A stretch of DNA of 64,000 bases from Selaginella moellendorffii. Taxonomy: Eukaryota; Plantae; Lycopodiophyta. The position numbers were made by a program, and so were the translations under genes. The DNA lies in assembly GCF_000143415.4 (NCBI RefSeq), contig NW_003314267.1, positions 2,260,932 through 2,324,931 on the forward strand, read 5' to 3'. A model generated the notes under the pieces. It was given only the letters and a program-made list of their open reading frames with translations, searched no databases and had not been told where the DNA came from. This document shows, piece by piece, positions 1,304 through 20,539 of this stretch. Each line of letters opens with the position of its first letter. Positions within the stretch are counted from its first letter, which is position 1.

Positions 1304-2134
1304 ATGGCAACAGCAGCAGCGGGCGAGTACCACAAGAAGCGCAAGCGCGGCAAGAACTGGAGCAACCAGGAGGCGATCCTCCTAATCGAGGCCAAGGACG
1401 CCACCAGCCGCGAAGGTATGGGCGCCTCGGCCAAGTGGCAAGCCGTGGCGGATCACCTCGAGAGCCAGGGCGTGCTGCGCGACGTGGAGCAGTGCCGCAG
1501 CAAATGGGAGAACATGCTGGGCGACTACCGCTCCATCCTGGAGCACGAGAGGCGCGGCTCCTCCTCCTACTTCGCGCTCACCAAGGAGCAAAAGAAGGAC
1601 CTCCGGCTGCCCGCCAAGTTCTCGCAGGATATGTTCCAGCTGCTCCAGCGCACCGTGACGCGCGGCGAGGCGGACATGGACGCTCTCCCCGTCGTCAATG
1701 CCGCGGCTCCTTTCGTCCCCGGGGATAGCTTCTCCAGCGAGGAGGTGCCGGGGCCGGGAGAGACGCCATCGCTCCTCCAGTTCCGCGAGGTTGGATCATC
1801 CGGGACTGGTGCTACTGCTACTGCTACCGCCGATCCCAATCCTCCAGCTCCTCATGCTGCTACTCCGAATGCTGCTGCTGCTACTGCGACCACCAAGAGG
1901 AAGCTTAGATCGATCGCTGCGGAGCCGGGGAGTGGATCGTTTGAGCTGGTTGCCAAGGCCATCTCCGAGTCCCAGGAGAAGATCCTGGCGTTTTTGCAAG
2001 AGCGGGAGGAGAGGAGGATAGAGATCGAGGAGAGGAAGCTGTCGAGGATGGACGAGCTGTTTGAGCTGCTCAGCAACATGGCTCACTCCTGGAAGACGCT
2101 GAGCGAACGGATGCTTGTCAACAGCTCGAGATGA
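1304..2134 (+). CDS. Trihelix (Myb/SANT-like) transcription factor, intronless CDS
   Basis: NWSNQEAILLI..KWQAVADHL..RDVEQCRSKWENM trihelix Trp pattern and a C-terminal coiled coil (EREERRIEIEERK). Confidence 0.88.
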   Translation: MATAAAGEYHKKRKRGKNWSNQEAILLIEAKDATSREGMGASAKWQAVADHLESQGVLRDVEQCRSKWENMLGDYRSILEHERRGSSSYFALTKEQKKDLRLPAKFSQDMFQLLQRTVTRGEADMDALPVVNAAAPFVPGDSFSSEEVPGPGETPSLLQFREVGSSGTGATATATADPNPPAPHAATPNAAAATATTKRKLRSIAAEPGSGSFELVAKAISESQEKILAFLQEREERRIEIEERKLSRMDELFELLSNMAHSWKTLSERMLVNSSR

Positions 2135-2613
2135 GCGTCGAGTCTTCTTCTATTTTTTGTTCCCAGTGCCGACACCACTGCGGTAAGTTATGTAGGTCTC
2201 TAACATACAGAATTTTGTCTCCTTTGTCCTCTCACAAACAGTGTTGTGTCACTCCCCCACCGCAAAGTTTTACGTAAATTTCACACCAAAAACTTACTGT
2301 GGAAGTTTTTATGAGAAGAAAATCTGTCGATCTGATTTATTTACAAAAGCTTTTAAGAACTTTCAACCAAACTCACTTCAAAGACTTTCCCAAGAACTTC
2401 AAACAAAGAAGTTTTGTGAGAAACAAAGGTGTGATCTGTGATTGATTTCTGGTTTCACTCCTCATAGAAAAGTCTGACGTACAGATAGAATGAGTAGAAC
2501 TCTTTCTATCTCAACTTCTCCCAAAACTTGAGAAGCTCACGCTTTCGAGAAAAAGAGAAGGAAAATCCGTGGATCTGTGATTGATTGATTGATTTTTCGT
2601 GTTGCTGCCTAAG

Positions 2614-5415
2614 CTAGCTAGCATTTTCTTCCCTACGCTGCATCTCCTCTTCATCCTCGTCCTCATCTTCGTCCTCGTCCTCCTCATCCTCATCCAAACT
2701 CTCGCGACGAGCAGCTTGATCCTCCTGACTAATGTTCAGATTAAGCCCTGCATGCAGCTGCGGCTGCTGAACCTGAGCCTGAGCCTGCACCTGCTGCTGC
2801 ACCTGCACCTGCATCTGCACCTGCACCTGCTGCTGAATCTGCAGCTGCTGCTGCTGGTTGCTCAAGTTGAGCGCCTTGAGCGCCGCGCGCTGCTTGTCCG
2901 ACTTCTCCCTCCTCTTCGGATCCGCGTAGTAGCGCACGAGCGAGTCCCACTGCTCCTGCGACACATCGCTGGGCCGGCTCGACCCCTGCTCGATCATCCG
3001 CATCACCTTGTGCCGCCGGAAGTTGAGCGCCTTGGCGACCTGCTTCTTGAGAAACGCGTCGTCCAGGCTGCCGCCAACGTACGTGAACTTGGAGTCCATG
3101 TAGTCGCGTATCCGGACCATGCCTTCCTCCGGCTGGAGCGCTATGTGCGGGATGGACACGTCCAAGAAGAGCAGCGCCGAGTGCCGCAAGATCGAGTTCC
3201 ACCATGTCCCGGTTGCTCCAGTCGGCTTCCCGTCGATCAGAGTTACGTTAGTCTTCTCTCCCTCCGCCACCGCCGCCGCTGGCTGCTTGCTTTCTTTCTT
3301 CGATGATGGAGGAGTGGCGAGTGCCTCACACCGGTTCTCAAAACTTTGAGGTGGAATCGCGGCAGTGAATGCTTCCGGCTGCTGCTGCTGCTGCTGCTTC
3401 TTCTGCGAAGACCACACGATCCGAAACTCCTTGTCACTCTCTTCCCCTTCTTGGAGAGACCCCTCGTCGTCGTTGCCGCCGTCGTCGTTTGTGTCGTCCT
3501 CGGTGCTGCTCGAGGATTTGCAGTCTCGATAAGTTTGCTGCTGCTGCTGCTGCTGCTGTTCTTGCCCATGTCCCTGCTGCTGCTGGAAAAATTGCTGCTG
3601 GTACTGTCTAGAGCTACTGGAGAGTGTTAGTTCCTGCCTAGCGGACGAAGAATCCCACACCGGAGCGGGACTTTGCTGCTGGTGGTGTTGCTGGACTTGT
3701 CCGTAAGAAGAGCTTTGCGGTTTCTGGTGATAAAAACTCGGCTGCTCGCTCGCTGGAGCCTGGAATCTACTGTAAGGAGGCACCGCATCGCTGCTGTAAA
3801 ACTCGCCACCGCCGCCACCTCGACCATTGTTATTGCTCGCGGCCCTGTTGTTAAAGTCCGAGGGTGACGAGGAGGAAACTCTGCGAGCTTGACGGGGGAG
3901 AGATGCCGTGGAAGAACACGAACCCGAGTCCATGGCCTGCGAGTCGGACGACGACGATGTCTCAGTGTCCGGTGGCCTCGTCAACCTGTTTACTATCGAG
4001 CGAGCCTTGTTCGCTCCTATTCTTTTCACTACCTCCACAAACAGCGCCTTCAAATCCCGCTCGTAGCTATCCGGGTTGCTCCTCTTGAGTCCCTTGATTA
4101 TGTCACGTATCCTGTTCTTCCTAGTGCTCGCGCCGTGGTGGCTTCTATTCGAGGCTCGACCGTTCAGAGCTGGTGTTGCCGCTGGAACTGGCTGTGGAGG
4201 TGGTGGTGCCTTCCGGATCATCGTACCTCTAGCCTTTTTCTTCCAAGCTTTTCTCGGCGGTGGCTGCTGCTGCTGCTGCTTGCTGTTCCATGCCCTGCTA
4301 TCCGAGATATCCTCACTCTCGGTACTAGCATCGTCTGTGATGGTCTTGGACTCGCTACTTCTATCCTGTAAATCAGTTCCCGGTTGCGTTGGCATCAATG
4401 CCAGCTGATGGTGAGGCCGCCACTCGATCATGTGTGTCTCTGGAACAAGCTCCTGTGAATACCTGAAAAAGCAGAAAAGAAAGAAAAAAAGATTCCAACT
4501 TTGTTAGAATTCACGAGAAAAAGCGAGGAGAAGTATACGTACGCTGGCATCCGAAACTTGTCCGTGAGCCCTGTAGCGGTGGCAGCTGGGTGGTGGTGGT
4601 GGTGGTGGTGTGGCGGCGGCGGTGGTGGTGGAGGAGCCAAGTGGGGGTGGTGAGGAGTTAGCATCAGTGAGCTTTCGTACATTCTCGTATTTAAGTTGAT
4701 GGCGTCGGATGGAAGCCTGAGAGGCTGCCGCATTGGAAAACCTGACATGTAACCTGATAACCAATGAGACGAGAAAACCAACAAGACAGGCAAACAAGAG
4801 AGAAAGGATAAAAAACCCTTGGAGAAACAAGAAAAAAGGACAGGGAGCTCACCACGAAAACGACAGCCAGCTAAACAACTCACGCTTTGGAAACAGTCAA
4901 GCAAAATGAGGAAAGAAAACGAAGAAAATCTAACCCGGGACAAGCAGGACACGGACAAACACACAAAAAAGGAAACGAGAGATTTTTTGTTACCTTGTTG
5001 AGGTTCGGGCTGCGAGAATTCCGGAAGAAACAAGGTCCCGTTTGGAGGTGAAGTTGCGGCGGCGATCTTGGAGGTGGCGTTGGCTTCGTGGTGATGGTGG
5101 TGGTGGTGGTGATGGTGATCGAGCTTGGATCTCTTGCCTTTGGAGTCGACGTCGGTGTCTACCTCGGATTCGCCATCGTTTTGCTGCATCTGCTTTTGCT
5201 TGCGCTTGGCTCGAGCCTTTCGGTTGTGGAACCAGTTGTGGACGTTGGCCTCCGTAACATCACCTTGGCGAGCGAGATCCACGGCGATCTCTTTGATCCG
5301 CTGCTTGTTGATACTGTCGCCCTCCTCCTCGAACAGCCGGACGAGCATCCGGAGCTGCTCCTCGTTCGGTTTCCATCGAACTTTGACGACGGCGGGAGGC
5401 AATTCTTGCAAAGCT

Positions 5416-5446
<31 letters not shown>

Positions 5447-5465
5447 AATGGCTTTCCTCCATCAT
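2614..5465 (-). CDS. WOX: WUSCHEL-related homeobox (WOX13/ancient clade-like) protein, 843 aa, with C-terminal CACTA TNP1/Transposase_24-like domain; exons 5465-4994, 4753-4543, 4462-2614
   Basis: Homeodomain RWKPNEEQLRMLVRLF..VTEANVHNWFHNRKARAKRKQ followed by the WOX13-type ESEVDTDV motif. Two GT-AG introns keep frame (472+211+1849=2532 nt) into the 605-aa ORF. Many polyQ/polyH tracts. Confidence 0.8.
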
Positions 5466-7017
5466 CTTGGGATCTGGTCATTGGAAAACCGAGAAGAAAA
5501 AATCCATCTTTTTGAGTGTGCTTTAAACAACTTGCCTTGCTCAACTCGTTCGCATCCTCAGGCTCCGCATTCTCGGCAGAAAAACTAGGAAGAGAAAACA
5601 AACAAGGAAAAATTCAGTCCGGGATGGCAGAGATCCCCAAAACTCTCCGAAGAACACGAGCAAGAGAAAAAAAATTCTCTTTCTTTTCTCCACGGCCCAA
5701 GAAAGAGAGAATGATACATGATAATGGCCCAGTCTCCTATAGAGGAAGAGAAAAGAAAAGCTGGCCTATATAATAGGATCGAGGGCGTTATCGACGGCAC
5801 CGGCCCACACAAGTGAAAATCCATCACCACGCACAAATGCAGGTTAGAAATCTCATCACACTCCCAGCAGCCGGGCAAAAATTCGCGAGCAAATCCACGA
5901 ATCGCCCACGAAAAGAAAAAGAAGCGAAGAAAACAAACCAAGAACACACCACCCCCACCAAAAAAAATTCATTGTTTTGATTCGAGGGAGAGAAGAGAGG
6001 AAGAGAAAAAAAAAACCCCCAAGCAAAGAGGAGAGAAAAAAAAGGAGACGGTGTGGATGCGTAGCTAACCTGGAAGATTGGCGATCGATCTATCGAATCA
6101 GGCGGCGCCGCCGCCGCTGGTGGCGAGCCCCAATCTTTGCCCCGATCCGCCACGACCCAAGTCACCGAAATTCGATCTCATCTATCCCACAGCCTCGCGA
6201 TTGCGGCGCGGTGGAGAGGAGCTGGCGCTGTGCGTCGGCCATGGCAGCTCTCTGTCGCGCGCGCCACTCTAAGCCGCCATATCCAAGTACTCTACCCGTG
6301 CGGGAATTTGGGCACGGCGATTCCAGGCCAGAATCTCCGCCCATCACGCATTCCGGACCGACGGATGGACGGCATCCACGAGCCGCTTAATGCTAATCAT
6401 GGTTAGCGGCCTGGGCGCTAATTCCAACGTCGGTAAATGGGGCTTTTAACCCCGGGGCAGGTTTAACCGACACCAGCGGTCACTGTCAGGCGTACGAAAG
6501 CGTACACCCGCCGGTCAGCGCGCCGTACCACATTGCATTCATTGTCGCTTATAATCGAGCGCGATTAGCTGCTAATAATCAATCGCGCAGGGACTGCGCA
6601 CGCATTGGCGATTATTTAATCTTTAATTAAACTCTGCGCTTCCATGCTTAACGTGAAAGACATCCAAGCAAGCGATCTATCTGGGTGGTTGTACAGTATG
6701 CGTATGCGATTGGCCAAGTATATTATACATTATATTGTACGAAAGATGGCGTCGCTTTTCCGGTATTTGCCGCTTGGGCGGCCAGCACTCTTTTCCCGAG
6801 TTTGGAATGTGGAATGGGCCCGACATTCATGCAAGAAGCGTTCCTCTTTAAGTACGGACGAGTGTGGGCCATGGCCGAATCTTGTGTGAAGCCGTACAAG
6901 GGCACGAACGTAAATTAGGGCAGAACAGGTCGGCTCTTGATTGACCATGACCATGGCGGCGCCGCTGGTGGAATAAGCGGCGCCGCTGGTTCTCTGCAGC
7001 TCGCGTCTAGGGCTTTT

Positions 7018-9477
<2,460 letters not shown>

Positions 9478-9596
9478 AAGCAAAGTTTTGTGTCCACTAA
9501 CGTTATATTTCCCAAAGGTCTTTACTTAAAGGTGAAAGCCTAATGTATAAAGATCCTATTTAGGGCATATTCCAAGGTTTTAGGGTTCTTAGATTC

Positions 9597-11471
9597 ATGA
9601 GCATTCTCACTCCGCCTTCTTCCCCCGCGCTCTCCTCCGCCTCGGACGATTTTGCTCTCCTCCTCGATTCCGAGCTCGCCGCTGAATCTGCCGACGAAGG
9701 ATCCGAGCCCGCGGCCAACAGGGAGGAAGCGGAAGATCTCGATGACGAGAATGAGGAGAGGTAACGATCATTCTCATCTCAATGTCGGTGCGATGGATAT
9801 TTCTTGGCAGGAGGAAGAGATTACGGCTGGATTCCGCGAGCAATTGTGAGTGGAATCTTTGTTTCTTTGTTAGAATGCGGGCGCTTAGCAAAATTTCTGC
9901 GTGTGCTGTGTGTTTCAGCGAGCTGTCCTCCACATCCCGGATTTATGTGGGGCGTTTGTATACGTTGCGGTGTGCTCAAGCCAAATTCAGAGCCTGGAGG
10001 AAGCGCCAGCAACGTTGCCTTGAAATACATCCATGAGGTAAGAGATTTCGTTGCCAGATCGTTTTTTGGTTCATCCTTCTGGTTTTAGGAGTTTGAGCTT
10101 GCTGGAGATGTTCTAGCTCGTGTTCGTGAAGACGAGCTTCGGCAAGTGTTGGGCAAACGGAAGCTCTTCCTGGTTTTGGATTTGGATCATACTCTACTGA
10201 ACTCTGCGCGCTGGATGGAAGTTTTTCCAGATGAGACGGCTTACCTTGAGCACACCTACATGAATGTTCCGGAAGACAAAATACCAGCATTATCCAATGG
10301 TGCTCCAGGTATCTTACTCCATCTTTCTTTTTTTCTTGTTTCCAGCTTTTGTTCTTTGTATTTCAGCTGTTGCCGGTGTTATTCAACCTGGAGGGGGAGG
10401 ACTGCACCGGATTCACGGCATGCAATTGTGGACAAAGCTGCGGCCTTTCGCTCATAAGTTTCTAGAAGAAGCAAGCAAACTGTTTGAGATGTATGTGTAC
10501 ACAATGGGCGAGAGGATGTACGCTGTGACAATGGCTCATCTCCTTGATCCCACCGGAAAGTTTTTCAAAGGTAGAGTCATCTCGCAACGCGACAGCACTT
10601 GTAGACAGACGAAGGACCTGGACATCGTTCTTGGAGCCGACTCGGCAGTGCTCATCCTTGACGATACAGAAGCGGTACTTATTTCTTAAGTTTCTATCTT
10701 TCGTTTTATTGGGAATGTCTGCTTCCAGGTCTGGCCGAAACATCGAGCCAATCTCATTGTCATGGAGCGATACCATTTCTTCCAGTCAAGCTGCCGGCAA
10801 TTTGGTTTGGAAAACCCGTCTCTTACGAAGGCCGAGAGGGACGAAAGCAAAGACGAAGGCGCGCTAGCAAACGTGCTCAAAGTCTTGCAAAGGATCCACA
10901 GCGACTTTTTCATGGTTTGTTTTAGCTTTTTCGAAAGAGTTTTTTTTTCTGGAAAGCTGCCACTTGCATCACTTTCCTTTCTCTACTGTCGCAGGAAAGC
11001 GATGATTCTCGTTACACTTGCGACGTCCGCGATGTAAGTCATTATCTCTTCGTTCTCTTCGCTGATTCCAACGCTATCCAGATCACCAGCGTCGTCCGGT
11101 CGGAAATACTCTCGGGGTGCAAGCTCGTGTTTAGCCGGATCTTCCCGACCGACTGCCTGGAACCCGAGCTCACTCCACTGTGGAGACTGTGCGTGGATCT
11201 GGGGGCCGAGTGTGTTCTAGCGCACGACGACTCGGTCACTCACGTAGTAGCGCTGGATCGATTCACGGACAAGGCCAAGTGGGCGAAAGAGCACCGAAAG
11301 TTTTTGGTCCATCCGGCGTGGGTGGAAGCAGCGCACTCGCTGTGGAGAAGACCAAACGAGTTGGAATTCCCAGTGCGCGAAGGCCAAACGCGAGCTCCAG
11401 TGTTTACATTTGCAAAGACTGTAAATGTAGAAGTCGAAAGGAATCGGGAAGAGAAAGACCAAACAAACTAG
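9597..11471 (+). CDS. CPL4: RNA Pol II CTD phosphatase-like 4 (FCP1 domain + BRCT), multi-exon
   Basis: N-terminal SSASDDFALLLDSEL, catalytic LVLDLDHTLLNS, TKLRPF, and BRCT VTHVVALD..VHPAWVEAA. Confidence 0.88.
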
Positions 11472-11591
11472 AACGATGAAATAGCTTGTGAGTGATATAG
11501 AATATTCGAAGTATGACTGGAATATTCTTTTATTTTTTGTGTGTCTTTGTGTTAGATCTAGGGTTCATCAATCTGCGGTGCTGGGGGAGCT

Positions 11592-14563
11592 ATGCCCATT
11601 CTCGCCACGTTCGAGGATCAGGAGCGCGAGAGCGAGTATGGATACATCCGCAAGGCAAGCGCGATCGCTCCATGGCTTTTCTTTGGATTTCCAGCTGCAT
11701 TTGGATTGAGTGATTGGAGGATTGGATGGATTGATTTGATCGCAATGCGATTTTGTTCCAGGTCTCCGGGCCTGTGGTCATTGCCGAGAATATGGCAGGC
11801 GCGGCGATGTATGAGCTGGTTCGCGTCGGGAATGACAAGCTCATGGGTGAGATTATTCGATTAGAAGGGGACTCGGCAACGATTCAGGGTATTGCTTTCT
11901 CGTTTCTTTTTTGTGATTGGAAGCTTTTCCTTAGCTGCAATTCTCGCGATTTTCTTGTAGTGTACGAGGAAACCGCTGGCTTGACCGTGAATGATCCAGT
12001 TCTTCGAACACACAACGTTTGTTTTCCTTTCTTTCTTTTTGATTTGTTTGTGAGTTTTTTTGACTTAAGCATTGAAACAGCCACTGTCAGTAGAGCTTGG
12101 ACCTGGAATTTTGAGCAACATCTTCGATGGTATTCAGGTATCACGGCTATGCATGAAAACTTTGGTTTTGAGGTCTATTTTGTTTGATTTGCAGCGTCCT
12201 CTTAAATCCATTGCCATTAAGTCGGGCGATGTCTACATCCCGCGAGGAGTTGCTGTGCCAGCACTTGACAAGGATAAGCTGTGGGAATTCTCTCCAAAAA
12301 AGATTGGTACGCTAATTTGTTCACTCGTAGTTGCTAACGAGCCTTTTTTTTTTTGTTTTTTTTGTTTTTTGTATTTGCAGGTGTTGGATCCGCCATCACT
12401 GGTGGAGACTTGTATGCAGTAAGTATGTGATAAGGATGAACAGCACAACAGGTTTCACCTATTTTTCTTTTGCAGATTGTCCATGAGAACTCGCTTATGG
12501 AACATCATATTGCTCTCCCTGCGGATGCTATGGGGAAAATAACTTATATTGCACCGCATGGTCAGTATAGTCTCCAGGTTAGTGGTAAGTGGTCCGTGTG
12601 GTATCGTTTGGACTCACGTTTTGCTGCAGGACAAGGTTCTGGAGCTTGAATTTCAAGGTACAAAGAAGCAGTTCACTATGCTTCAGGTAATCAATCAACT
12701 GTATGTTAACAGTTCTGAAGTTATGATGTTTTCTTTATCAGATGTGGCCTGTCCGAACGCCACGACCTGTAGCATCTAAGCTTCCTGCAGACACTCCTTT
12801 GCTTACTGGACAGGTATGTGAAATTTTATTGTCGAGCTAGAGCTGAACTGGCCTTTCCTTACAGCGCATTTTGGATGCTCTGTTTCCTTCCGTGCTAGGG
12901 GGAACCTGTGCTATTCCGGGAGCATTTGGCTGTGGAAAGACCGTTATTAGTCAGGCGCTTTCGAAGGTATTTGGAGTTCATTTGTAATGCGTGACTGACT
13001 TTGTCATGAAACAGTTTTCGAACTCTGACGCTGTCATTTACGTGGGATGTGGCGAACGAGGAAACGAAATGGCTGAGGTCGGTTCTAGAATTTCCCATTT
13101 TTCTTATCTTTGTTTCTACAAATCACCTCTTGCAGGTGTTGAAAGACTTTCCACAGCTTACTATAACACTTCCTGATGGACGCGAAGAGTCTGTCATGAA
13201 GCGTACAACTCTCGTCGCTAATACTTCAAATATGCCTGTGGCGGCACGAGAAGCTTCAATTTACACGGGTATGTCCTTCCAATTCAGGCTCAGCGCTGAT
13301 TTTATCGATGGTTTCAGGCATTACTCTGGCTGAGTATTTCCGTGACATGGGCTATAATGTCAGTATGATGGCTGACTCGACGTCGAGATGGGCCGAAGCC
13401 TTGCGTGAAATATCCGGTCGACTCGTAAGTCTCTGATTTTCTTTCTATTCCTAATTTACAAACGCCGCGCAGGCCGAAATGCCTGCCGACAGTGGTTATC
13501 CAGCGTATTTGGGTGCACGTTTGGCTACGTTTTACGAGCGGGCTGGAAAGGTTAAATGCCTTGGTAGTCCCGACAGAACTGGAAGTGTTTCTATTGTCGG
13601 TGCCGTGTCTCCTCCTGGTGGCGATTTCTCAGACCCTGTTACGGCAGCGACTCTTAATATTGTCCAGGCAAGCGTCTTTGTGCCAGTTGTTTTTCAGTGT
13701 TGACTGGGACACTGTTGTTTGTTGCAGGTGTTTTGGGGACTTGACAAGAAGCTTGCGCAAAGAAAGCATTTCCCTGCTGTCAACTGGCTGATATCTTATT
13801 CGAAGTATACCCAGGTGAGAGACATTTATATCTTGTCTCGTGGAAAACCATTGATTGTTTCTTTTGATGCAGGCATTGGAGGGATTCTATGAGCATTATG
13901 ATCCGAACTTTATTTCAATCCGAACAAAAGCACGTGAAGTGCTACAAAGAGAAGACGATCTAAACGAGATTGTTCAGGTACGTGAACTGGTGAGAGATTC
14001 AAAGTCAGTACTTTCTTTTCACAGCTTGTCGGCAAAGATGCGCTGGCCGAGGGAGATAAGATTATTCTTGAGACGGCCAAGCTCTTGAGAGAGGATTATT
14101 TGGCGCAAAACGCTTTCAGTGTGTACGTGTTCCGGGCTTGCTCTTGTTTATCGCTAACAATCTGCTCCAGATACGATAAGTTTTGTCCGTTCTACAAGTC
14201 CGTTTGGATGATGCGAAACATCGTTCATTTCTGCGACCTGTCCACTCAGGTATGCACTGCCATACCTCTTTCACGTCCTTGAAAATTTACTTTCTCTTGC
14301 AGGCTGTTGAGAAAGCTGCCGGATCCAAGGGTCAGAAAATAACTTTCAACATCATCAGGCAGCGCCTCGGAGACATCATATACCGTTTAGTGTAAGGACT
14401 CTCGATTTTTTCTTGAAGCCACCATTGCACTTCCTTTTCCAGCTCCCAAAAATTCGAAGATCCGGCCGAGGGCGAGTCTGCGCTGTGCTCCACGTACCAG
14501 AAACTCTACGACGATTTGACAACCGCGTTCCACAACTTGGAAGACGAGTACCGCGCGGCATAA
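11592..14563 (+). CDS. VHA-A: Vacuolar H+-ATPase catalytic subunit A, about 20 exons
   Basis: [15 protein letters not shown], Walker [39 protein letters not shown]-terminal FHNLEDEYR. Confidence 0.97.
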
Positions 14564-15587
14564 GATAGAACTGGTTTTCTCCACCCGTAAATAACGTCTC
14601 GTCGCGCTTGGTAAAAAACCATTCTTTTCTTTGCGTCCAAGCTCTCCATAGGTGGTTCTCTGCGCAATATTTATATACTACTCCTGGTATTTTTTTTGCT
14701 TTGAGCTAAGTTTGTTCCAGTGGCAGTGGCAGCAGCAAACTCTCACGATCTAGCTACTGTCACTCCAGGCTTTATCAGTTGCTTGGAATCTATACTCTCT
14801 TGGGACTCAAGTAAGCGATGCGCCAACCATGACAGCATTCATGAATGGGGCCATCCATCCCCATCCATGCATGTGTCATAGCCATGGCATATGCGCCATA
14901 CGTTCAAGGTATATACCTATCGGAGCCAGCGCATGGCCATGGGTCCCATGCCCTCATGATAATGACCATGGCCATAAACGCGACACATGCCACAAAACCA
15001 ACGGTGTCGGTGGCGTGGCATATTCGCGTGGCATCTTTTTAGTGTACGGAATTCGCTGCCAGAGTGAGTACGGATGGCCGAGGATCCAGCGTCTCTGTCC
15101 AAAGCACACGAGGAACATTAAGAAATTTTCACCTATGTGGCGAGGCTAGTGTTGTAAATGTAATTTACGCTATCACGCGGGCTTTACCATGGTCAAAGCA
15201 AATAAGAAAAAGAAGATAGCCCTTTACACGGGATATATTATTTTAATCTCGCGGTAACTACTGTTCTTGTGTGTGTGGTGGCTCTGTTCTTTCTTCCAGG
15301 CGCTAGGTCTAGCGCTTTGGAGGAGGAGTGTGATTCTCGCAAGACGATGCTGCCGCCGCCGGGATCTGCTGTGGATTGCTCCCGCGTCATGTCCACCTCC
15401 CGAAATCTGGGGCTTCGGCGCCGCTGCGCGACGCGCTCCTGATCTCGTGGAGCCGGGAATCCATCCGATCCGGCTGGGGCGCGCCGGGCATTCCGATCTG
15501 ATGCGTGCCGCCAGGCGCTAGATAGATTCTCCTCATCGCGTCAAGAAGGGGGAGCGAAATTTCAGGATTGCGCGTGGATTAGCGGCA

Positions 15588-17376
15588 ATGTCGGACAGTA
15601 GCAGCGGCTCGGCGTCATGTAGCAGTGATTCTATCTCCGGCGGCAGCACGGATTCCATATGCCTCGACTTGGGCATGGTTCCATGGGGAGGACAGGTAAT
15701 ATAACGGTTTCTTCGTAGAATGTAGGCTATGGCTTTCACGAATTGCTAGAATTTGAGGGAGCTAGCTCCTTGTTTTTCCCCTTGTGTGCTTTCTGGACGA
15801 TCCTTACAAATTTTCTTCTCTTTGTTTTTCTTTGGGCAGAGTCATCTAGTATCAACCTCTTACGGCCCAATTTCTGTGATAGTTTGTGGCGACCAGGACA
15901 AACCTGGGCTTCTTACGTACCCAGACTTGGCTCTCGATAGTAAGTGTTTCTTTCTTTGTTCCTCTTTCACTAAAGCTGCTATATCCATCCTTTTTTTTTT
16001 CCTTTCTTTTGAGCAGCTGCTTCTTGTTTCGATGGATTTTTCTCATGCCCGGAAACGTCGTCTCTGGTGTTTCACAACTTTTGCATTTATCATATTGAGG
16101 CTCCGGGTCACGAGGTTCGTACTTTCGTGAAAGAAGGTGTGAGAGAAGTTAGAAATTTCTTTTAATTCTTCTTCTTTCGGTTGCAGGTCGGTGCTCCTGC
16201 GGTGCCATCCAACGCACGCCTTCTTTCGGTGGATGACTTGGCAGATCAAGTTGCCGAAGTCTGCGACTATTTTGCGTATGTACAGTTCTTCCTTGTGGAC
16301 TTTTATCTTATTCAGCTGTTCGTGTTGTTTATTTCAGGTTGCAAGAGGTGATATGCTTGGGCGTAGCGGCTGGTGCGTATATCCTCTCGTTGTTCGCGGT
16401 GAGCAGCTCTTCCTTGTCATCTGGACTTTGATTAATCTAGTTTTCGTGCACACAGATGAAGTACCGGGAGCGTGTGCTTGGCCTTGTTCTGGTCTCGCCA
16501 ATCTGCCGAGCTCCAAGCTGGTCAGAGTGGCTATACGACAAGGTTGGTTGGATTTGAAATGTCATATCAGTATACTGAAAGATTCCTTGTACCAGGCGGT
16601 CATCAATTTGCTATATTTCATGGGAATGTGTTCATTCGTTCGGGACAGTCTTTTAGAAAGATATCTTAGTCCAGTAAGGAGATTGCTAGCTTTCCTGGTT
16701 CCGATTGGTTAGCTCATCACGTCATGATCTTGTGTAGGATACTTTAGCGTCCGGAGAGTCGGGAGCTCTTGCAAGATATCAAAAGGTACAGTGCAAATTC
16801 TCCCTGTGCTCTAGACAAAGGTTGTCTTGCTCGCGCAGGTTTTAGATGACAGACAAAGCAGGAACGTCATGCATTTCTGGCAATCGCTCCACAGGTAAAA
16901 CTGTTCAGCGCAAGATTTTATGTACAGCGCGCTCAAAGCTGTGTTTCACTCGGACAGGAGAAAGGACCTGACGGCGGGGCTGATGAATCTCAAGTGCCGG
17001 ACGCTCGTGTTTGTGGGGGAGCACTCACCGTTTTACAACGAGGCGGTCTACGTGAACTCTCAAATGCCATCGACGTCCACGGCGCTAGTGGCGGTAAGCA
17101 TTCAAAGTTCCAAACTTCTAAACGTGATTCCACCACCCGCAGGTCCAAGAGGCTGGCACGCTAGTGACGGAAGAACAGCCACTGTCGATGCTAGTCCCCA
17201 TGGAGTACTTTCTGAAGAGCTTTGGGTTTGGCAAGCCGCCGTCGACGAGCCAGAACTCGTCTCCGCCGACGAGCCCGCTCAGCTTGCTGCCTTGCATTTC
17301 CCCGGAGCTGCTTTCTCCCGAGAGTCTTGGCCTCAAGCTCAAGCCCATCAAAACCAAAGCTCCAGTCGATGATTAG
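15588..17376 (+). CDS. NDL: N-MYC downregulated-like (NDL/SF21) alpha/beta-hydrolase-fold protein, multi-exon
   Basis: [24 protein letters not shown]-terminal [21 protein letters not shown]. Confidence 0.9.
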
Positions 17377-17491
17377 ATTCGTGGCTCCTCGCCATCGCCA
17401 TTTATCCCGGTGTTCATCACTCCGGCCATTTCTTCCTCATTCCTCTTTTCTTTTCTTGTACAAGATTGTCTGTGCTCCCCTCCCATTCTTT

Positions 17492-17498
<7 letters not shown>

Positions 17499-17531
<33 letters not shown>
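17499..17531. repeat. (CT)n microsatellite in NDL 3' region
   Basis: About 16 CT units, directly visible. Confidence 0.95.
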
Positions 17532-17535
<4 letters not shown>

Positions 17536-17857
17536 CCTTGACGAGAGTTGTTTGTTATTACGCGGCGGCTTATTATTGTTCAGGAATAATTGTGGCACAA
17601 TTTTTTTGAGGAAGGATTCTTATGATTCCTGTAAAAAATAAAAAACAAAGCTTCAAAGTTGTACTGTGCGTACAACAGTAAACACGTTTTTACTTCTCTC
17701 AAAGTCTCCATGGATCTTTTACAAAACAGATGTGTGTAGTTCTTTCAAGGAAAAAAAACACAAGATCTTTGGCACAAATTTGTGTACCTACTGTAGATTT
17801 GGCGTTATTTACTTCTTCCTTTCGATGCTATGGAGCAATAAGTTTGCGCCGCCACCT

Positions 17858-20539
17858 TTAGGTTCTTGCTCTAGCGCATTCGCGAGTGTGTGAGTGAATT
17901 TCACCTCAGGGGTCGAACCAGCTCGGGTTGTAACACCAACAGCTCGGACAAAGAGTGGTGCTGTTGCTTTCCATCCGTGTCATCGCCACTGCAAAACAAA
18001 CATGGTGCTCGCTGAGTGAGTGACTACGCTCGAAGATCAAAGAGCTCGATAACTTACCAGGTTCTAGTGTCGAGGTTGAGGAGCCTGTGATTGATCCTCA
18101 AGTCGTCCGTAACGTAGCTGGCAACGAGAGCTCCAGCGTCGGGGTGAGGCCAGCTGCGAGAGCTCGCGAAACGGAGTATAAAGCTGCCCGTCTTTGGGAT
18201 TCCGTCCACGCCGCGCAAGAGCTCCTCGGCCTCCTTGCGAGACACCATTCCTTCTATCCACTTGGGAGTGACGCTCTCCCACGTCTTGCGGACCTGTGGA
18301 GTCGCCACCGTCATCGCCACGGGATAAAGCCATTGCCACAACCTGTCGAACTGCTCACGCGTTGTCGTCGCGTTTCCAGTCCCGCAGTTCTGCTGGATGA
18401 ATTCGATGTCCTGAAAAAAAGGCCTTGTTTGTGATATAATCTTTTGAGATACAATCGTTACCTTAGAGGTGAAACGTCTTTTACTCTGGCCAGAGATGTT
18501 GTAGAAGCTCTCTTCCAGCTTGCTCATCAAACTTGGCCATGGAGCTGAGTAGCCATCGTGAGAAACCTGCCTCCAAATGTCTTCTCCTTCTCGTAGCAGC
18601 TTCTTTGCGATCAAAACTTGATACCTGAGAAGTTTATGAAACATTAGCAACCAGGAAGGAGATAAACGAGAATAGAAAACGAATCGCCATCATACCCGTT
18701 ATGTTGGCACCCGGTATATTGAGAGACTCGGCCGGCGAATTCATGAAGCTCTTCTTCGGTTTTGCTCACAACGAGTGCTCTCAGAAATGCTGCTCGGCTG
18801 TGAATTGTTTCTAAGCAGTACTTGAATACCATGTAGTCCGAGAATGCCTTCTCCCCACAGCTGCTGTTCATGAAAGCCGGAAAGCTCTTGCGGCTTTCTG
18901 GACGTTGCTTCTTGTCCATTGCCTTGTATACACTAGCCGGAGCAGGCCGCGAGCACGTTGCAGGAGCTGGCGGAGGAGCCATTCTTTGGGATCCAACAAG
19001 ACCGTCGGCACCTTTGGATATCACTGAGCCTTCTGGCGTTTTGTCTGCCGGCATCGGAAACCGTGAAGGTAACTTATCATCTCCAATGCGTGGCGCCTTG
19101 CTTGGTGCGAACTTCGGAGCGGCCATGCCGTTGGATTCATTCGCTCGTAATGTTTCAGGTCGATCCTCTGCCGCTGAAGGTAAGTTGGTGCCATCGACCG
19201 GGTAAACGGCTGCGAAGGAACGCTTCCAGGGTGCTGAAGGCGTTCGACTATTTCTGTTTCGCGAAACGCAGCGGATCGGCCGCGAGAAAACTCTGAGAAA
19301 TGGAAACTTTGGAATGTTTGGCGACTCGAAGCATACACGAAACAGTCGGTTGTCACATTTCGAGGAGAGCTGCATGCAAAAGACACAAGCTGAAAACTTT
19401 CAAAAATATCCAACCCTTGCAGCATACCTGCGAAATCTTTAGCTTAAAAGAAGCTCTACCGTGGACTAGTTTGATAGGCCTCTCAGTAGATGGGAATTCT
19501 ACTCCATCGAATGTAGTTAAAAGCGGCGCTTCTGCGTCATCTTTTGGCTTTTCAACCAGATAGCCCGTATCCGCATAGACAAGGGACGCGACAAGCTGCA
19601 GAAAGTGAAAGAAGTAAGTGCCAATCTGATACTAGAAGAGCAAAGTCACCTCTATATCTTTGTGAATAGCTCGTCCCAAGGCATCCAACAAAACCACATC
19701 AAGAGCAAAATTTCTGCGACATGATGCCTTGCCTCCAACGACGCTCCATACGCCATCTCCTCCTTCTTCAAGTTCATGGTCCTCGGATCCTCCAGTCGAG
19801 CCATCAAGCGACAGCTCCAGAGGTGGATTCTGTGACAAAAGTCGTCGTAAAGGAAAAACTAAAGCAAAATCAAAGGCAGTACCTTTACGTAGTGATTGGT
19901 CACGGATGGTTGCGGAAGGACACAAACATGATGTGCATATGCTTGCACAAAACCGCCACGATTTTGTCCGTCTCCACCACTAAGTTTAACAGGTTCTACG
20001 GTCTCGTCACATGATGGAAAGCTTATTGCCTTCTCTCCAGTTACGACGCCATCAATGTGTAGACGTGCAATGTTGTGTCCAATCTACAAATCAAAACATG
20101 ACTTTTAGAAATCCTCCCATCTCATAAAAACTTCATCAGCAGCTACCTCACACCCAACGTGCACCCATTTCTCAACTGGACAACTTTGATCAGCAAGTAC
20201 ATCGAGCTCGCTTGATTCGGTTTGAACCAAGGGATGAAGAACCAGCCGTAAATCGTTGTCGAGTGATAGAAATGGAAGCGATTGGATACTCGAAGTAGAC
20301 TGTATGCATAGAAACATAGCACAAACACTCTTTAGCTCATGAGAGGAAAACAAGAGGCTCACCTGTCGGATGATAACCCCGGGGTGTCTGTTGTTCTTCA
20401 AGAGATACATCCACAAACATAGCGTGTAAGTGCCATCCTCGCTGGTGTTCTCTCGAGTTAAAGTCACTTGCAAATCGTCTAGAGGTAAGTACTCATCGTT
20501 GTCAAACACGGCGAACGCTTTGGACAGTTTCACGGCCAT
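17858..20539 (-). CDS. Plant SH2-domain STAT-like protein (SHA/SHB type), multi-exon; 3' end approximate
   Basis: N-terminal ConA/LamG-like YTLCLWMYL..KWVHVGCEV, LFRVCFE..RPIRCVSR, and SH2 WIEGMVSRKEAE..GSFILRFASSRSWPHPDAG. Confidence 0.85.

What the first reader, a model, noticed from the sequence alone, without database searches (positions are those of the whole stretch)
2614..5465. WOX homeodomain fused in frame to a CACTA/En-Spm TNP1 (Transposase_24)-like domain: candidate domesticated TF-transposon chimera
Seen: the homeobox exon splices through two canonical GT-AG introns (phases 1 and 2) into the 605-aa ORF (..MPA|YSQELVPETHMIEW..), giving 843 aa, about three times a usual WOX13. Near the C-terminus (about 2870-3250) it reads GKPTGATGTWWNSILR..QPEEG..KF..FLKKQVAKALNFRR..RPSDVSQEQWDSLVRYYADPKRREKSDKQR. 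This follows the remembered TNP1/Ptta pattern G-x-P-x-G ... P-x-x-V-x-x-EQW-x-x-LV-x-Y[W]-x-x-P-x-x-x-x-KS, but stops before the usual H-x-x-G motif. No DDE transposase or CACTA TIRs are visible nearby, and the domain is embedded in polyQ/acidic TF-like sequence. Inference: a TnpA-like DNA/chromatin-binding module has been co-opted by a stem-cell-family TF. I know of no described WOX with this architecture.
Basis: partly seen in the sequence, partly recalled or inferred. Interest (0 to 1): 0.85.

Follow-up and report, generated by a model that had tools for sequence, protein, structure and literature searches.

The report
WOX homeobox gene carrying transposon-derived domain
A Selaginella stem-cell-family (WOX13-type) transcription factor gene really is spliced onto a long last exon, and that exon holds a conserved protein module whose only other relatives are the second, TnpA-like gene of CACTA transposons, so a transposon part appears to have been recruited into a developmental regulator.

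Summary

**Orthologue.** S. kraussiana WOX13E is a 574-aa protein whose CDS was confirmed by RT-PCR. It has the same layout: the homeodomain is 93% identical and the C-terminal module 63-74%.

**The module (window 2866-3258).**
- Pfam Transposase_24 matches below threshold (14.9 bits; cut-off 28.7).
- An exhaustive phmmer search finds 61 further relatives (E 5e-9 to 1e-3).
- 13 of 27 relatives sampled carry Transposase_24, starting where the WOX module ends.
- In 4 of 5 contexts checked, the relative lies beside Transposase_21/DUF4218 genes, as in CACTA elements.
- A profile comparison gives 99.4% probability.
- The AlphaFold model (pLDDT 92.9) matches Transposase_24 clusters at TM 0.77.

**What is absent.** The WOX copy lacks the transposon proteins' C-terminal GRTGPxG part. 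No inverted repeats flank the gene, and no transposase turned up among the large neighbouring ORFs checked.

**Selection.** Strain variants leave the module's protein sequence unchanged and do not touch the homeodomain.

**Function.** The module's biochemical role is unknown. No solved structure matches it.

**Earlier work.** The papers I searched do not describe the module. The scan noted the same fusion on another piece of this genome.

The parts
6072..6095 (-). 3' end of an upstream 5'UTR exon; its start was not determined. An intron at 6071..5587 follows.
   Evidence: The loose end of the spliced contigs at 5586 maps uniquely to 6072-6095.
5536..5586 (-). Small 5'UTR exon, followed by a 62-nt GC-AG intron at 5535..5474.
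   Evidence: A joint 5473/5536 with CT..GC on the + strand is seen in all 4 runs.
4994..5473 (-). First coding exon. The ATG is at 5465, and it encodes 157 codons plus 1 base: polyQ, the homeodomain, an ESEVD motif and a His run.
5202..5384 (-). WOX-type homeodomain, residues 28-88.
   Evidence: Pfam Homeodomain E 2.7e-11, 43.6 bits. It is 93% identical to S. kraussiana WOX13E.
4754..4993 (-). Intron 1: 240 nt, GT-AG, phase 1.
   Evidence: The joint is in contigs of 4 runs and in the sequence. Low-depth contigs inside it (2.8 against 21.6) suggest some unspliced RNA or DNA carry-over.
4543..4753 (-). Coding exon 2, 211 nt. It holds the LRLPSD..YESS motif shared with SkWOX13E and Pro/His runs.
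   Evidence: tblastn of P0001 and the joints.
4463..4542 (-). Intron 2: 80 nt, GT-AG, phase 2.
   Evidence: The joint is in contigs of 4 runs and in the sequence.
2413..4462 (-). Last exon. The CDS runs to 2617, the stop is at 2616..2614, and the 3'UTR extends to about 2413-2458.
   Evidence: Contigs cover 2413-4459. ORF.
3862..4410 (-). Linker with blocks conserved only with SkWOX13E (SESKTITDD, GTMIR, RIRDI..YERDLKALF..VKR). It has no relative among the transposon proteins.
2866..3258 (-). TnpA/TNP1-like module, residues 630-760 of the 843-aa protein. It is a beta-hairpin plus five helices with pI 9.7. The stretch aligned to the transposon profile is 2881..3264.
2617..2865 (-). Q/V-rich stretch followed by an acidic D/E tail. 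This replaces the GRTGPxG...RDKGY part of the transposon proteins.
   Evidence: Sequence. hhalign stops at query residue 138. The transposon model has two further helices.

Best explanation
This is one expressed gene, the orthologue of Selaginella kraussiana WOX13E. Its product has four parts: an N-terminal WOX13-clade homeodomain, about 540 residues of fast-evolving low-complexity linker, a folded basic module of about 130 residues, and a Q/V-rich and acidic tail.

The module is homologous to the conserved core of the second (ORF2, TnpA/TNP1-like, Pfam Transposase_24) protein of CACTA/En-Spm transposons. It covers the roughly 100 residues that precede the Pfam model plus its first ~30 positions. 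It lacks the last two helices, including the GRTGPxG motif, of the transposon proteins.

The most likely history is that part of a CACTA ORF2 was incorporated into the last exon of a WOX13 gene. This happened before the split of S. kraussiana from the window's species, and the module has been kept under purifying selection since. That makes it a domesticated transposon module.

Shown here: the gene model, the homology, the transposon context of the relatives, the truncation and the conservation.

Inferred only: the module gives the homeodomain protein a second nucleic-acid or chromatin contact, a self-association surface, or both, by analogy with TnpA. TnpA binds subterminal repeats and dimerises. 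I put that functional reading at about 0.4.
For: Gene model:
- Spliced contigs from 4 studies.
- An in-frame 843-aa CDS.
- SkWOX13E has the homeodomain, the exon-2 motif, the linker blocks and the module in one 574-aa protein. Its cDNA/CDS was confirmed by RT-PCR and it is expressed in four tissues (PMC4742569).

Homology:
- Transposase_24 is the only Pfam family hit by the module in both species, at E 0.03.
- phmmer finds 61 further relatives covering query residues 11-140.
- 13 of 27 sampled relatives carry PF03004, best E 1.9e-26, starting at the position aligned to query residue ~113.
- hhalign against a transposon-only profile gives probability 99.4%, E 4e-21.
- The AF2 model has pLDDT 92.9. 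It matches ESM Atlas clusters in which 71-90% of members carry PF03004, at TM 0.77 over 147 residues.
- The transposon protein's own model has the same order of secondary-structure elements.

Transposon nature of the relatives:
- One protein occurs identically on 22 contigs.
- Transposase_21 with DUF4218 (and DUF4216 in two of them) lies 4-5 kb away, head to head, in 4 of 5 contexts.
- Published work uses Transposase_24 as the marker of CACTA ORF2/tnpA (PMC8195511, PMC8978399).

Domestication:
- No inverted repeats flank the gene, no second copy lies in the window, and the neighbours are ordinary genes.
- The module is 63-74% identical between species, while the linker is about 35% identical or unalignable.
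- Of 23 variants between runs, 16 change the protein. None of those 16 lies in the homeodomain or the module.
- On the tree the two WOX tips are short (0.15-0.2) and sit on a long stem.
Against: - The Pfam match is below the gathering score and covers only 27 of 138 positions.
- The tree does not nest the WOX pair inside any transposon clade with support, so the donor and the direction of transfer are not proven.
- No solved structure resembles the module: Foldseek E>0.4 and best VIA Z 5.5-5.8, which is noise level. The sequence profile also found no PDB chain. The biochemical role therefore has no direct support.
- A 2026 preprint describes the TnpA DNA-binding domain as two tandem tri-helical HTH motifs. 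I could not show that this module is that domain.
- dN/dS between species was not computed, because no S. kraussiana DNA was retrievable.
- No single contig spans the whole CDS. Continuity across 3528-3586 rests on one run.
Confidence: 0.8

Rival explanations
1. Reverse direction. The module is an old host (WOX13E-lineage) domain that CACTA elements captured, and it then spread as part of their ORF2.
For: CACTA elements often capture host gene fragments (stated in PMC8195511), and their ORF2 is described as open to added domains (PMC8978399). The WOX pair sits on its own long branch, not nested within transposon clades.
Against: The module is an integral, contiguous part of the conserved Transposase_24-bearing block in many divergent transposon proteins from liverworts, a moss and seed-plant clusters. 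Only one host lineage has it, and that copy is the truncated one. No other homeodomain protein appears among the 61 relatives.
Confidence: 0.1
2. Recent transposon insertion, read-through or assembly chimera. The homeobox gene and the 605-aa ORF are not one functional unit.
For: The last exon is unusually long and rich in simple repeats. Contigs break at the CAG repeat at 3528-3586 in three of four runs.
Against: The splice joints are the same in 4 studies, and run X8 has a contig bridging the repeat. The architecture is the same in S. kraussiana, with an RT-PCR-confirmed CDS. There are no inverted repeats and no transposase nearby. Only the ~130-aa module resembles transposon proteins; the rest of the exon does not.
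Confidence: 0.03
3. The module is retained but is only a structural spacer or a decaying relic with no role of its own.
For: It lacks the C-terminal third of the transposon block. No fold with a known function matches it.
Against: It is 63-74% identical across a deep Selaginella split, while the flanking linker has diverged beyond alignment. The family's invariant or near-invariant residues (W116, L44, Q54, Y72, R94, P108) are all kept. The predicted fold is confident. No amino-acid variants were seen among strains.
Confidence: 0.07

Closest known systems
Selaginella kraussiana WOX13E (UniProt A0A0P0LAI8, GenBank KR870330; Ge et al. 2016, PMC4742569)
   Same: Same architecture in the same order: homeodomain (93% identical), LRLPSD..YESS motif, SESKTITDD and YE.DL.ALF blocks, EFRIVWSS, then the module (63-74% identical) ending in KSDKQRAALKALN.
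   Different: It is 574 aa against 843 aa. The window's protein has large polyQ, polyH, polyP and acidic expansions. The published paper compared homeodomains only and did not discuss the C-terminal module.
CACTA/En-Spm ORF2 (TnpA/TNP1-like) proteins carrying Pfam PF03004 Transposase_24
   Same: A shared core of ~128 residues (G.KP..G.P.G..W...LDPS..I..QP...FEY....R......P..V...W..LV....KS) with the same predicted beta-hairpin and helices. Scores: hhalign 99.4%, TM 0.77.
   Different: The transposon proteins continue with GRTGPxG...LGRSPDPDE...RDKGY (two more helices) and the rest of the Pfam domain. They are multi-copy and sit beside Transposase_21/DUF4218 genes. The WOX copy is truncated, occurs once in the window, is fused to a homeodomain, and scores below Pfam's threshold.
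Canonical WOX13-clade (T1WOX) proteins such as AtWOX13 and moss WOX13L
   Same: WOX-type homeodomain. An ESEVD motif just downstream of it resembles the ESExE-WOX13 motif described by Deveaux et al. 2008 (PMC2584047).
   Different: From general knowledge, the usual proteins are about a third of this length and end soon after the homeodomain region. No transposon-like module has been described in them: the WOX phylogenomic survey PMC6788696 has no occurrence of 'transpos'.
Transposase-derived transcription factors and host-transposase fusion genes (FHY3/FAR1, MUSTANG; KRAB-transposase fusions), as discussed in bioRxiv 10.64898/2026.08.24.746577
   Same: The principle is the same: a transposon-encoded protein part is immobilised, conserved and used in a host regulator.
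   Different: Those derive from the transposase itself and usually supply the only DNA-binding domain. Here the donor is the accessory ORF2 protein of a CACTA element, and the recipient already has a homeodomain.

Membership tests
WOX (WUSCHEL-related homeobox), WOX13/T1 clade | Homeodomain of the WOX type | tested here: met
   Pfam Homeodomain 43.6 bits, above the cut-off of 22.9. It is 93% identical to a protein its source names Wuschel-like homeobox 13E.
WOX (WUSCHEL-related homeobox), WOX13/T1 clade | Clade motifs: WOX13/T1WOX motif N-terminal of the homeodomain and ESExE motif just downstream | tested here: inconclusive
   ESEVD follows the homeodomain (translation), which is close to ESExE (PMC2584047). 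Only 26 residues, mostly polyQ, precede the homeodomain, so an N-terminal WOX13 motif is not evident. No clade phylogeny was run here.
Pfam PF03004 Transposase_24 (Ptta/En/Spm family) | Score at or above the curated gathering threshold (28.7 bits) | tested here: not met
   14.9 bits, E 0.03, model positions 2-28 of 138 for the window. SkWOX13E scores 13.9-15.1 bits. By Pfam's rule it is not a member. It is homologous to the block that precedes and overlaps the start of the model in proteins that do pass, such as P0002 at 43 bits.
Pfam PF03004 Transposase_24 (Ptta/En/Spm family) | Presence of the full domain, including the part after the KS motif (GRTGPxG and beyond) | tested here: not met
   The hhalign alignment ends at query residue 138 of 226. 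The template continues to 264 columns. Q/V-rich sequence replaces the rest.
CACTA/En-Spm transposon (as a mobile element) | CACTA terminal inverted repeats and a Transposase_21 (TnpD) gene in the element | tested here: not met
   No flanking inverted repeats beyond simple-repeat matches. No transposase domain in the neighbouring ORFs, which are GH47, NIF phosphatase, ATP synthase, Ndr and a trihelix gene.
Domesticated transposon-derived gene | Immobile, and conserved as an orthologue in another species | tested here: met
   One copy in the window. S. kraussiana has the same fused protein. Synteny between the two species was not tested.
Domesticated transposon-derived gene | Expressed as part of a host transcript | tested here: met
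   Spliced contigs in 4 studies. SkWOX13E RNA-seq and RT-PCR (PMC4742569).
Domesticated transposon-derived gene | Purifying selection on the transposon-derived part | tested here: inconclusive
   Module identity is 63-74% against about 35% in the linker. None of 16 protein-changing variants falls in the module or the homeodomain, which together make up 23% of the CDS. A simple binomial gives about 0.016, or about 0.06 if five variants in the repeat near contig ends are dropped. A formal dN/dS could not be computed.

The most novel reading that the evidence does not exclude
The TnpA-derived module still recognises CACTA subterminal-repeat-like motifs, or multimerises as TnpA does. WOX13E would then tie a WOX stem-cell and regeneration regulator to binding sites that CACTA elements scattered through the Selaginella genome. 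That would be an old, lineage-specific rewiring of a developmental network by a transposon accessory protein. It would also be the first domesticated CACTA TnpA-like module, and it would show that this protein family predates flowering plants.
Probability: 0.15. Interest if true: 0.85.

Novelty: new variant of a known kind. Interest (0 to 1): 0.62.

Why it matters
Transcription factors derived from transposons are well known, but they come from the transposases themselves. In the papers I could search, I found no host gene built from the CACTA accessory (TnpA/TNP1-like) protein, and no WOX protein described with such a module.

WOX13-clade genes act in stem-cell formation and regeneration in non-seed plants. 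A lineage-specific WOX with an extra conserved, basic, transposon-derived module is therefore a concrete candidate for how a developmental regulator gains new targets or partners.

The relatives found here also show that Transposase_24-type ORF2 proteins sit in CACTA elements of liverworts and mosses. A 2026 preprint, working from RepBase elements, reports that TnpA-like proteins appear restricted to flowering plants.

The module's fold has no solved counterpart, so a structure would inform both the WOX protein and the TnpA family.

Tried and rejected
- **Pfam on the whole 605-aa ORF:** only noise hits. The Transposase_24 signal appears only when the module is scanned alone, and it is sub-threshold.
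- **Word-indexed protein searches:** they returned only SkWOX13E, five transposon fragments or nothing. I found no further orthologues and no fragments from other lycophytes. These blanks are weak evidence because of the tool's length and word limits.
- **S. kraussiana DNA for dN/dS:** the protein is not on record in the contig collection.
- **PDB searches:** the sequence profile found no chain. By fold, Foldseek found nothing at E<=0.001, and VIA-align's best Z was 5.5-5.8 (APC/C subunit, FF, RomX, BEN, P-element transposase), within the tool's stated noise range. I do not read a function from these.
- **Other parts of exon 3:** no similarity to any transposon relative; only SkWOX13E matches.
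- **Donor clade:** the tree gives no supported nesting, and long branches meet.
- **Chance resemblance:** rejected.
- **The ORFs on the opposite strand and in other frames of 2600-5600:** by-products of repeat-rich sequence, not pursued.
- **Species of the window:** not determined, because run organisms are coded. The closest named protein is from S. kraussiana.
Full report
**What is in the sequence.** The first 157 codons from the ATG at 5465 hold a homeodomain (Pfam PF00046, E 2.7e-11, residues 28-88).

Reading the minus strand gives:
- a GT at 4993-4992 and an AG at 4755-4754 (intron 1, 240 nt, phase 1);
- an exon at 4753..4543;
- a GT at 4542-4541 and an AG at 4464-4463 (intron 2, 80 nt, phase 2);
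- a last exon starting at 4462.

I joined these exons only inside a local script, to count residues and classify variants. The CDS is 2532 nt, which is 843 aa plus a stop. All searches used single exons or parts of them, by reference.

**Is it one transcript?** Twenty public runs from nine studies hold the stretch. I laid the contigs of four runs from four studies on 2300-5800.
- All four runs show the same three joints: 4459/4540 (80 nt skipped, cut +3), 4751/4992 (240 nt skipped, cut +2) and 5473/5536 (62 nt skipped).
- Single contigs of 1852-1941 nt run 5586 > 5536 | 5473 > 4992 | 4751 > 4540 | 4459 > 3586. They therefore carry the homeobox exon 876 nt into the 605-aa ORF.
- Their loose end beyond 5586 maps to 6072-6095, so there is a further 5'UTR exon.
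- Contigs of similar depth cover 3528 down to about 2413-2458, which includes the module and the 3'UTR.
- The break at 3528-3586 is a CAG repeat that the tool skips. In run X8 a contig covering 3236-4078 bridges it.
- Intron 1 has only low-depth contigs (2.8 against 21.6).

These runs are labelled 'RNA?' by guess. Contigs without the introns show that they hold spliced RNA. No single contig spans the whole CDS, so a full-length read is still wanted.

**An orthologue with the same layout.** A search with the module region found one protein, S. kraussiana 'Wuschel-like homeobox 13E' (P0001, 574 aa, with PF00046). Compared with the window it shares:
- the homeodomain, 93% identical;
- the exon-2 motif LRLPSD..YESS;
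- the SESKTITDD and YE.DL.ALF..VKR blocks;
- EFRIVWSS;
- the module, 63-74% identical.

Ge et al. 2016 (PMC4742569) identified SkWOX13E from DNA-seq and RNA-seq and confirmed the cDNA/CDS sequences by RT-PCR. [quoted passage not shown] Their analysis used homeodomains only, and the word 'C-terminal' does not occur in the text. The architecture is therefore real, conserved within Selaginella, and already deposited. The papers I searched do not interpret it.

I could not check it. It may be the second haplotype or a paralogue.

**What the module is.**
- *Pfam.* Scanned alone (window 2827-3294, 156 aa), the module hits only Transposase_24, at E 0.03 and 14.9 bits against a cut-off of 28.7. The match covers profile positions 2-28 of 138. 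The S. kraussiana module behaves the same way.
- *Exhaustive sequence search.* A phmmer run against 1.84 billion representatives gave SkWOX13E (1e-71) and 61 further proteins at E 5e-9 to 1e-3. These matches cover query residues ~11-140.
- *Pfam on the relatives.* Of 27 scanned, 13 carry PF03004 (best 1.9e-26), and none carries a homeodomain. Their PF03004 match starts exactly where query residue ~113 aligns. About 100 residues of the shared block therefore lie upstream of the Pfam model.
- *Alignment.* The consensus is G.KP..V...G.PYG.G..W...L.K...LDPS...IR.QP.....L..RL...FEYS..L....LR...G.AL...R..L...I......P..V....W..LV....S.....KS. W116 is invariant, and L44, Q54, Y72, R94 and P108 are nearly so. 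The WOX proteins keep all of these residues.
- *Profile comparison.* hhalign of the last 226 residues of the window's protein against a profile built only from transposon proteins gives probability 99.4% and E 4.3e-21. Columns 11-138 align with columns 11-138 of 264.
- *Where the similarity ends.* The transposon proteins continue with ANACR..KGRTGPxG..GI.ERL...LGRSPDPDE...EM.RDKGY. The WOX proteins have a Q/V-rich stretch and an acidic tail there instead.

**Structure.**
- With the 44-sequence alignment, AlphaFold2 gives mean pLDDT 92.9 and pTM 0.79. The elements are strands 15-20 and 23-25, helices 29-43 and 56-69, strand 70-73, and helices 79-102, 113-124 and 126-155.
- The ESM Atlas search by shape returns clusters in which 71-90% of members carry PF03004, some also with Peptidase_C48 or DUF8039. 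These match at TM 0.77-0.78 by query, over 146-147 residues, with rmsd 2.8-3.0.
- The feature-based Atlas search also lists a PF03004 cluster, at score 0.88.
- A model of the transposon protein P0002:84-323 has the same elements in the same order, then two extra helices (152-164 and 170-177) that the WOX proteins lack.
- No solved structure matches either model. Foldseek gives E>0.4. VIA-align's best Z is 5.5-5.8, and the tool's own notes place that in the noise range. A sequence profile finds no PDB chain.
- The fold is therefore confidently predicted but has no known functional counterpart.

**Are the relatives really transposon proteins?** The named ones come from Riccia sorocarpa, Riccia fluitans and Ceratodon purpureus. 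The rest come from unnamed assemblies. I checked five genomic contexts.
- P0005 is encoded identically on 22 contigs. It lies about 5 kb from ORFs with Transposase_21, and with DUF4218 on the longest contig, on the opposite strand.
- The same head-to-head arrangement, with Transposase_21 and DUF4218 (plus DUF4216 in two cases), holds for members of three other clusters.
- One context (P0006) shows no transposase.

Published work treats Transposase_24 as the domain of CACTA ORF2/tnpA and Transposase_21 as that of tnpD (PMC8195511, PMC8978399).

**Is the WOX copy domesticated?**
- The window holds no second copy.
- No inverted repeats flank the gene beyond simple-repeat matches.
- The neighbours are ordinary genes: a trihelix/Myb_DNA-bind_4 gene at 1304-2134, then GH47, NIF phosphatase, ATP synthase alpha/beta and Ndr.
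- Only the module resembles transposon proteins. The first 385 residues of the last exon match nothing but SkWOX13E.
- Among 23 variants between the four runs, 16 change the protein, and none of these lies in the homeodomain or the module. The only variant in the module is synonymous (D727D), and the homeodomain has no variant at all. The two folded parts make up 23% of the CDS, so this is suggestive, not conclusive.
- On the tree the two WOX modules form a pair (100/99) with short tips (0.15-0.2) on a long stem (1.28). They are not nested with support in any transposon clade. The donor and, strictly, the direction of transfer remain unproven.

**How it probably works.** The module is basic (pI 9.7, against 6.4 for the whole protein). 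It has a K/R-rich helix (KKQVAKALNFRRHKVMR) that holds the near-invariant R94. It ends in a helical hairpin that runs into a Q/V-rich helix. TnpA binds the subterminal repeats of its element (PMC8195511). For an Arabidopsis TnpA, one preprint predicts a positively charged DNA-binding domain followed by a coiled-coil dimeriser (bioRxiv 10.1101/2024.04.02.587720). A second preprint reports TnpA as a sequence-specific transcriptional regulator (bioRxiv 10.64898/2026.08.24.746577).

By analogy, I think the module most likely adds a second nucleic-acid or chromatin contact, or self-association, to the homeodomain protein. The acidic tail would then act as an activation region. This is inference at about 0.4. 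I could not show that the module is the 'two tri-helical HTH' DNA-binding domain the 2026 preprint describes.

**Comparison and novelty.** By Pfam's rule the module is not a Transposase_24 member, because the threshold and full-domain tests both fail. It is a truncated homologue of the conserved core of Transposase_24-bearing CACTA ORF2 proteins. The gene is a WOX13-type gene by its homeodomain and by its named orthologue. The principle of a transposon protein part co-opted into a regulator is known. The source (the CACTA accessory protein) and the recipient (a WOX homeodomain factor) are, as far as my searches reach, undescribed.

**Verdict.** I rate it a new variant of a known kind, with interest 0.62.

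Noticed in passing
window 1304-2134 (+): A 276-aa ORF with a Myb/SANT-like trihelix domain (Myb_DNA-bind_4, E 1.7e-11). It lies convergent to the WOX gene, and the two 3' ends are only about 280-320 nt apart.
   Followed up: partly
window 5474-5535 (-) and 5587-6071 (-): Two introns in the 5'UTR of the WOX gene. The first (62 nt) has a GC-AG boundary and is seen in all four runs. The start of the upstream exon was not determined.
   Followed up: partly
window 3269 and 3349: In-frame length polymorphisms between runs in the linker just upstream of the module: +12 nt (a CCG repeat) and -3 nt. Runs also differ in the Q/V repeat at 2807-2820, but those differences lie near contig ends and may be assembly artefacts.
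   Followed up: no
window 4756-4948: Low-depth contigs lie inside intron 1 in two runs (depth 2.8-17.8, against 21-80 for the exons). This could be unspliced RNA, intron retention or DNA carry-over.
   Followed up: no
L001, L005, L006, L007: CACTA-type contigs, apparently from bryophyte or unnamed plant material. A Transposase_21/DUF4218(/DUF4216) gene and the Transposase_24-type ORF2 lie head to head, 4-5 kb apart. Named relatives come from Riccia and Ceratodon. A 2026 preprint reports, from RepBase elements, that TnpA-like proteins appear restricted to flowering plants.
   Followed up: partly
ESM Atlas clusters: Several structural relatives combine the module with Peptidase_C48 (ULP-like protease) or DUF8039. 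This is the same domain order reported for CACTA ORF2 in Chenopodium (PMC8978399).
   Followed up: no
same genome, other pieces (scan notes s1-375121, s1-392375): Earlier first-stage notes report Sola-like transposases with a TnpA/Tnp1-type N-terminal module in this genome. If that is true, they are candidate donors or relatives of the WOX module. I could not read those stretches.
   Followed up: no
window 7230-19375: The neighbouring ORFs carry ordinary domains (GH47, NIF phosphatase, ATP synthase alpha/beta N-terminal, Ndr, and a weak SH2 match). The WOX gene therefore sits in a gene-dense, non-repetitive region.
   Followed up: partly
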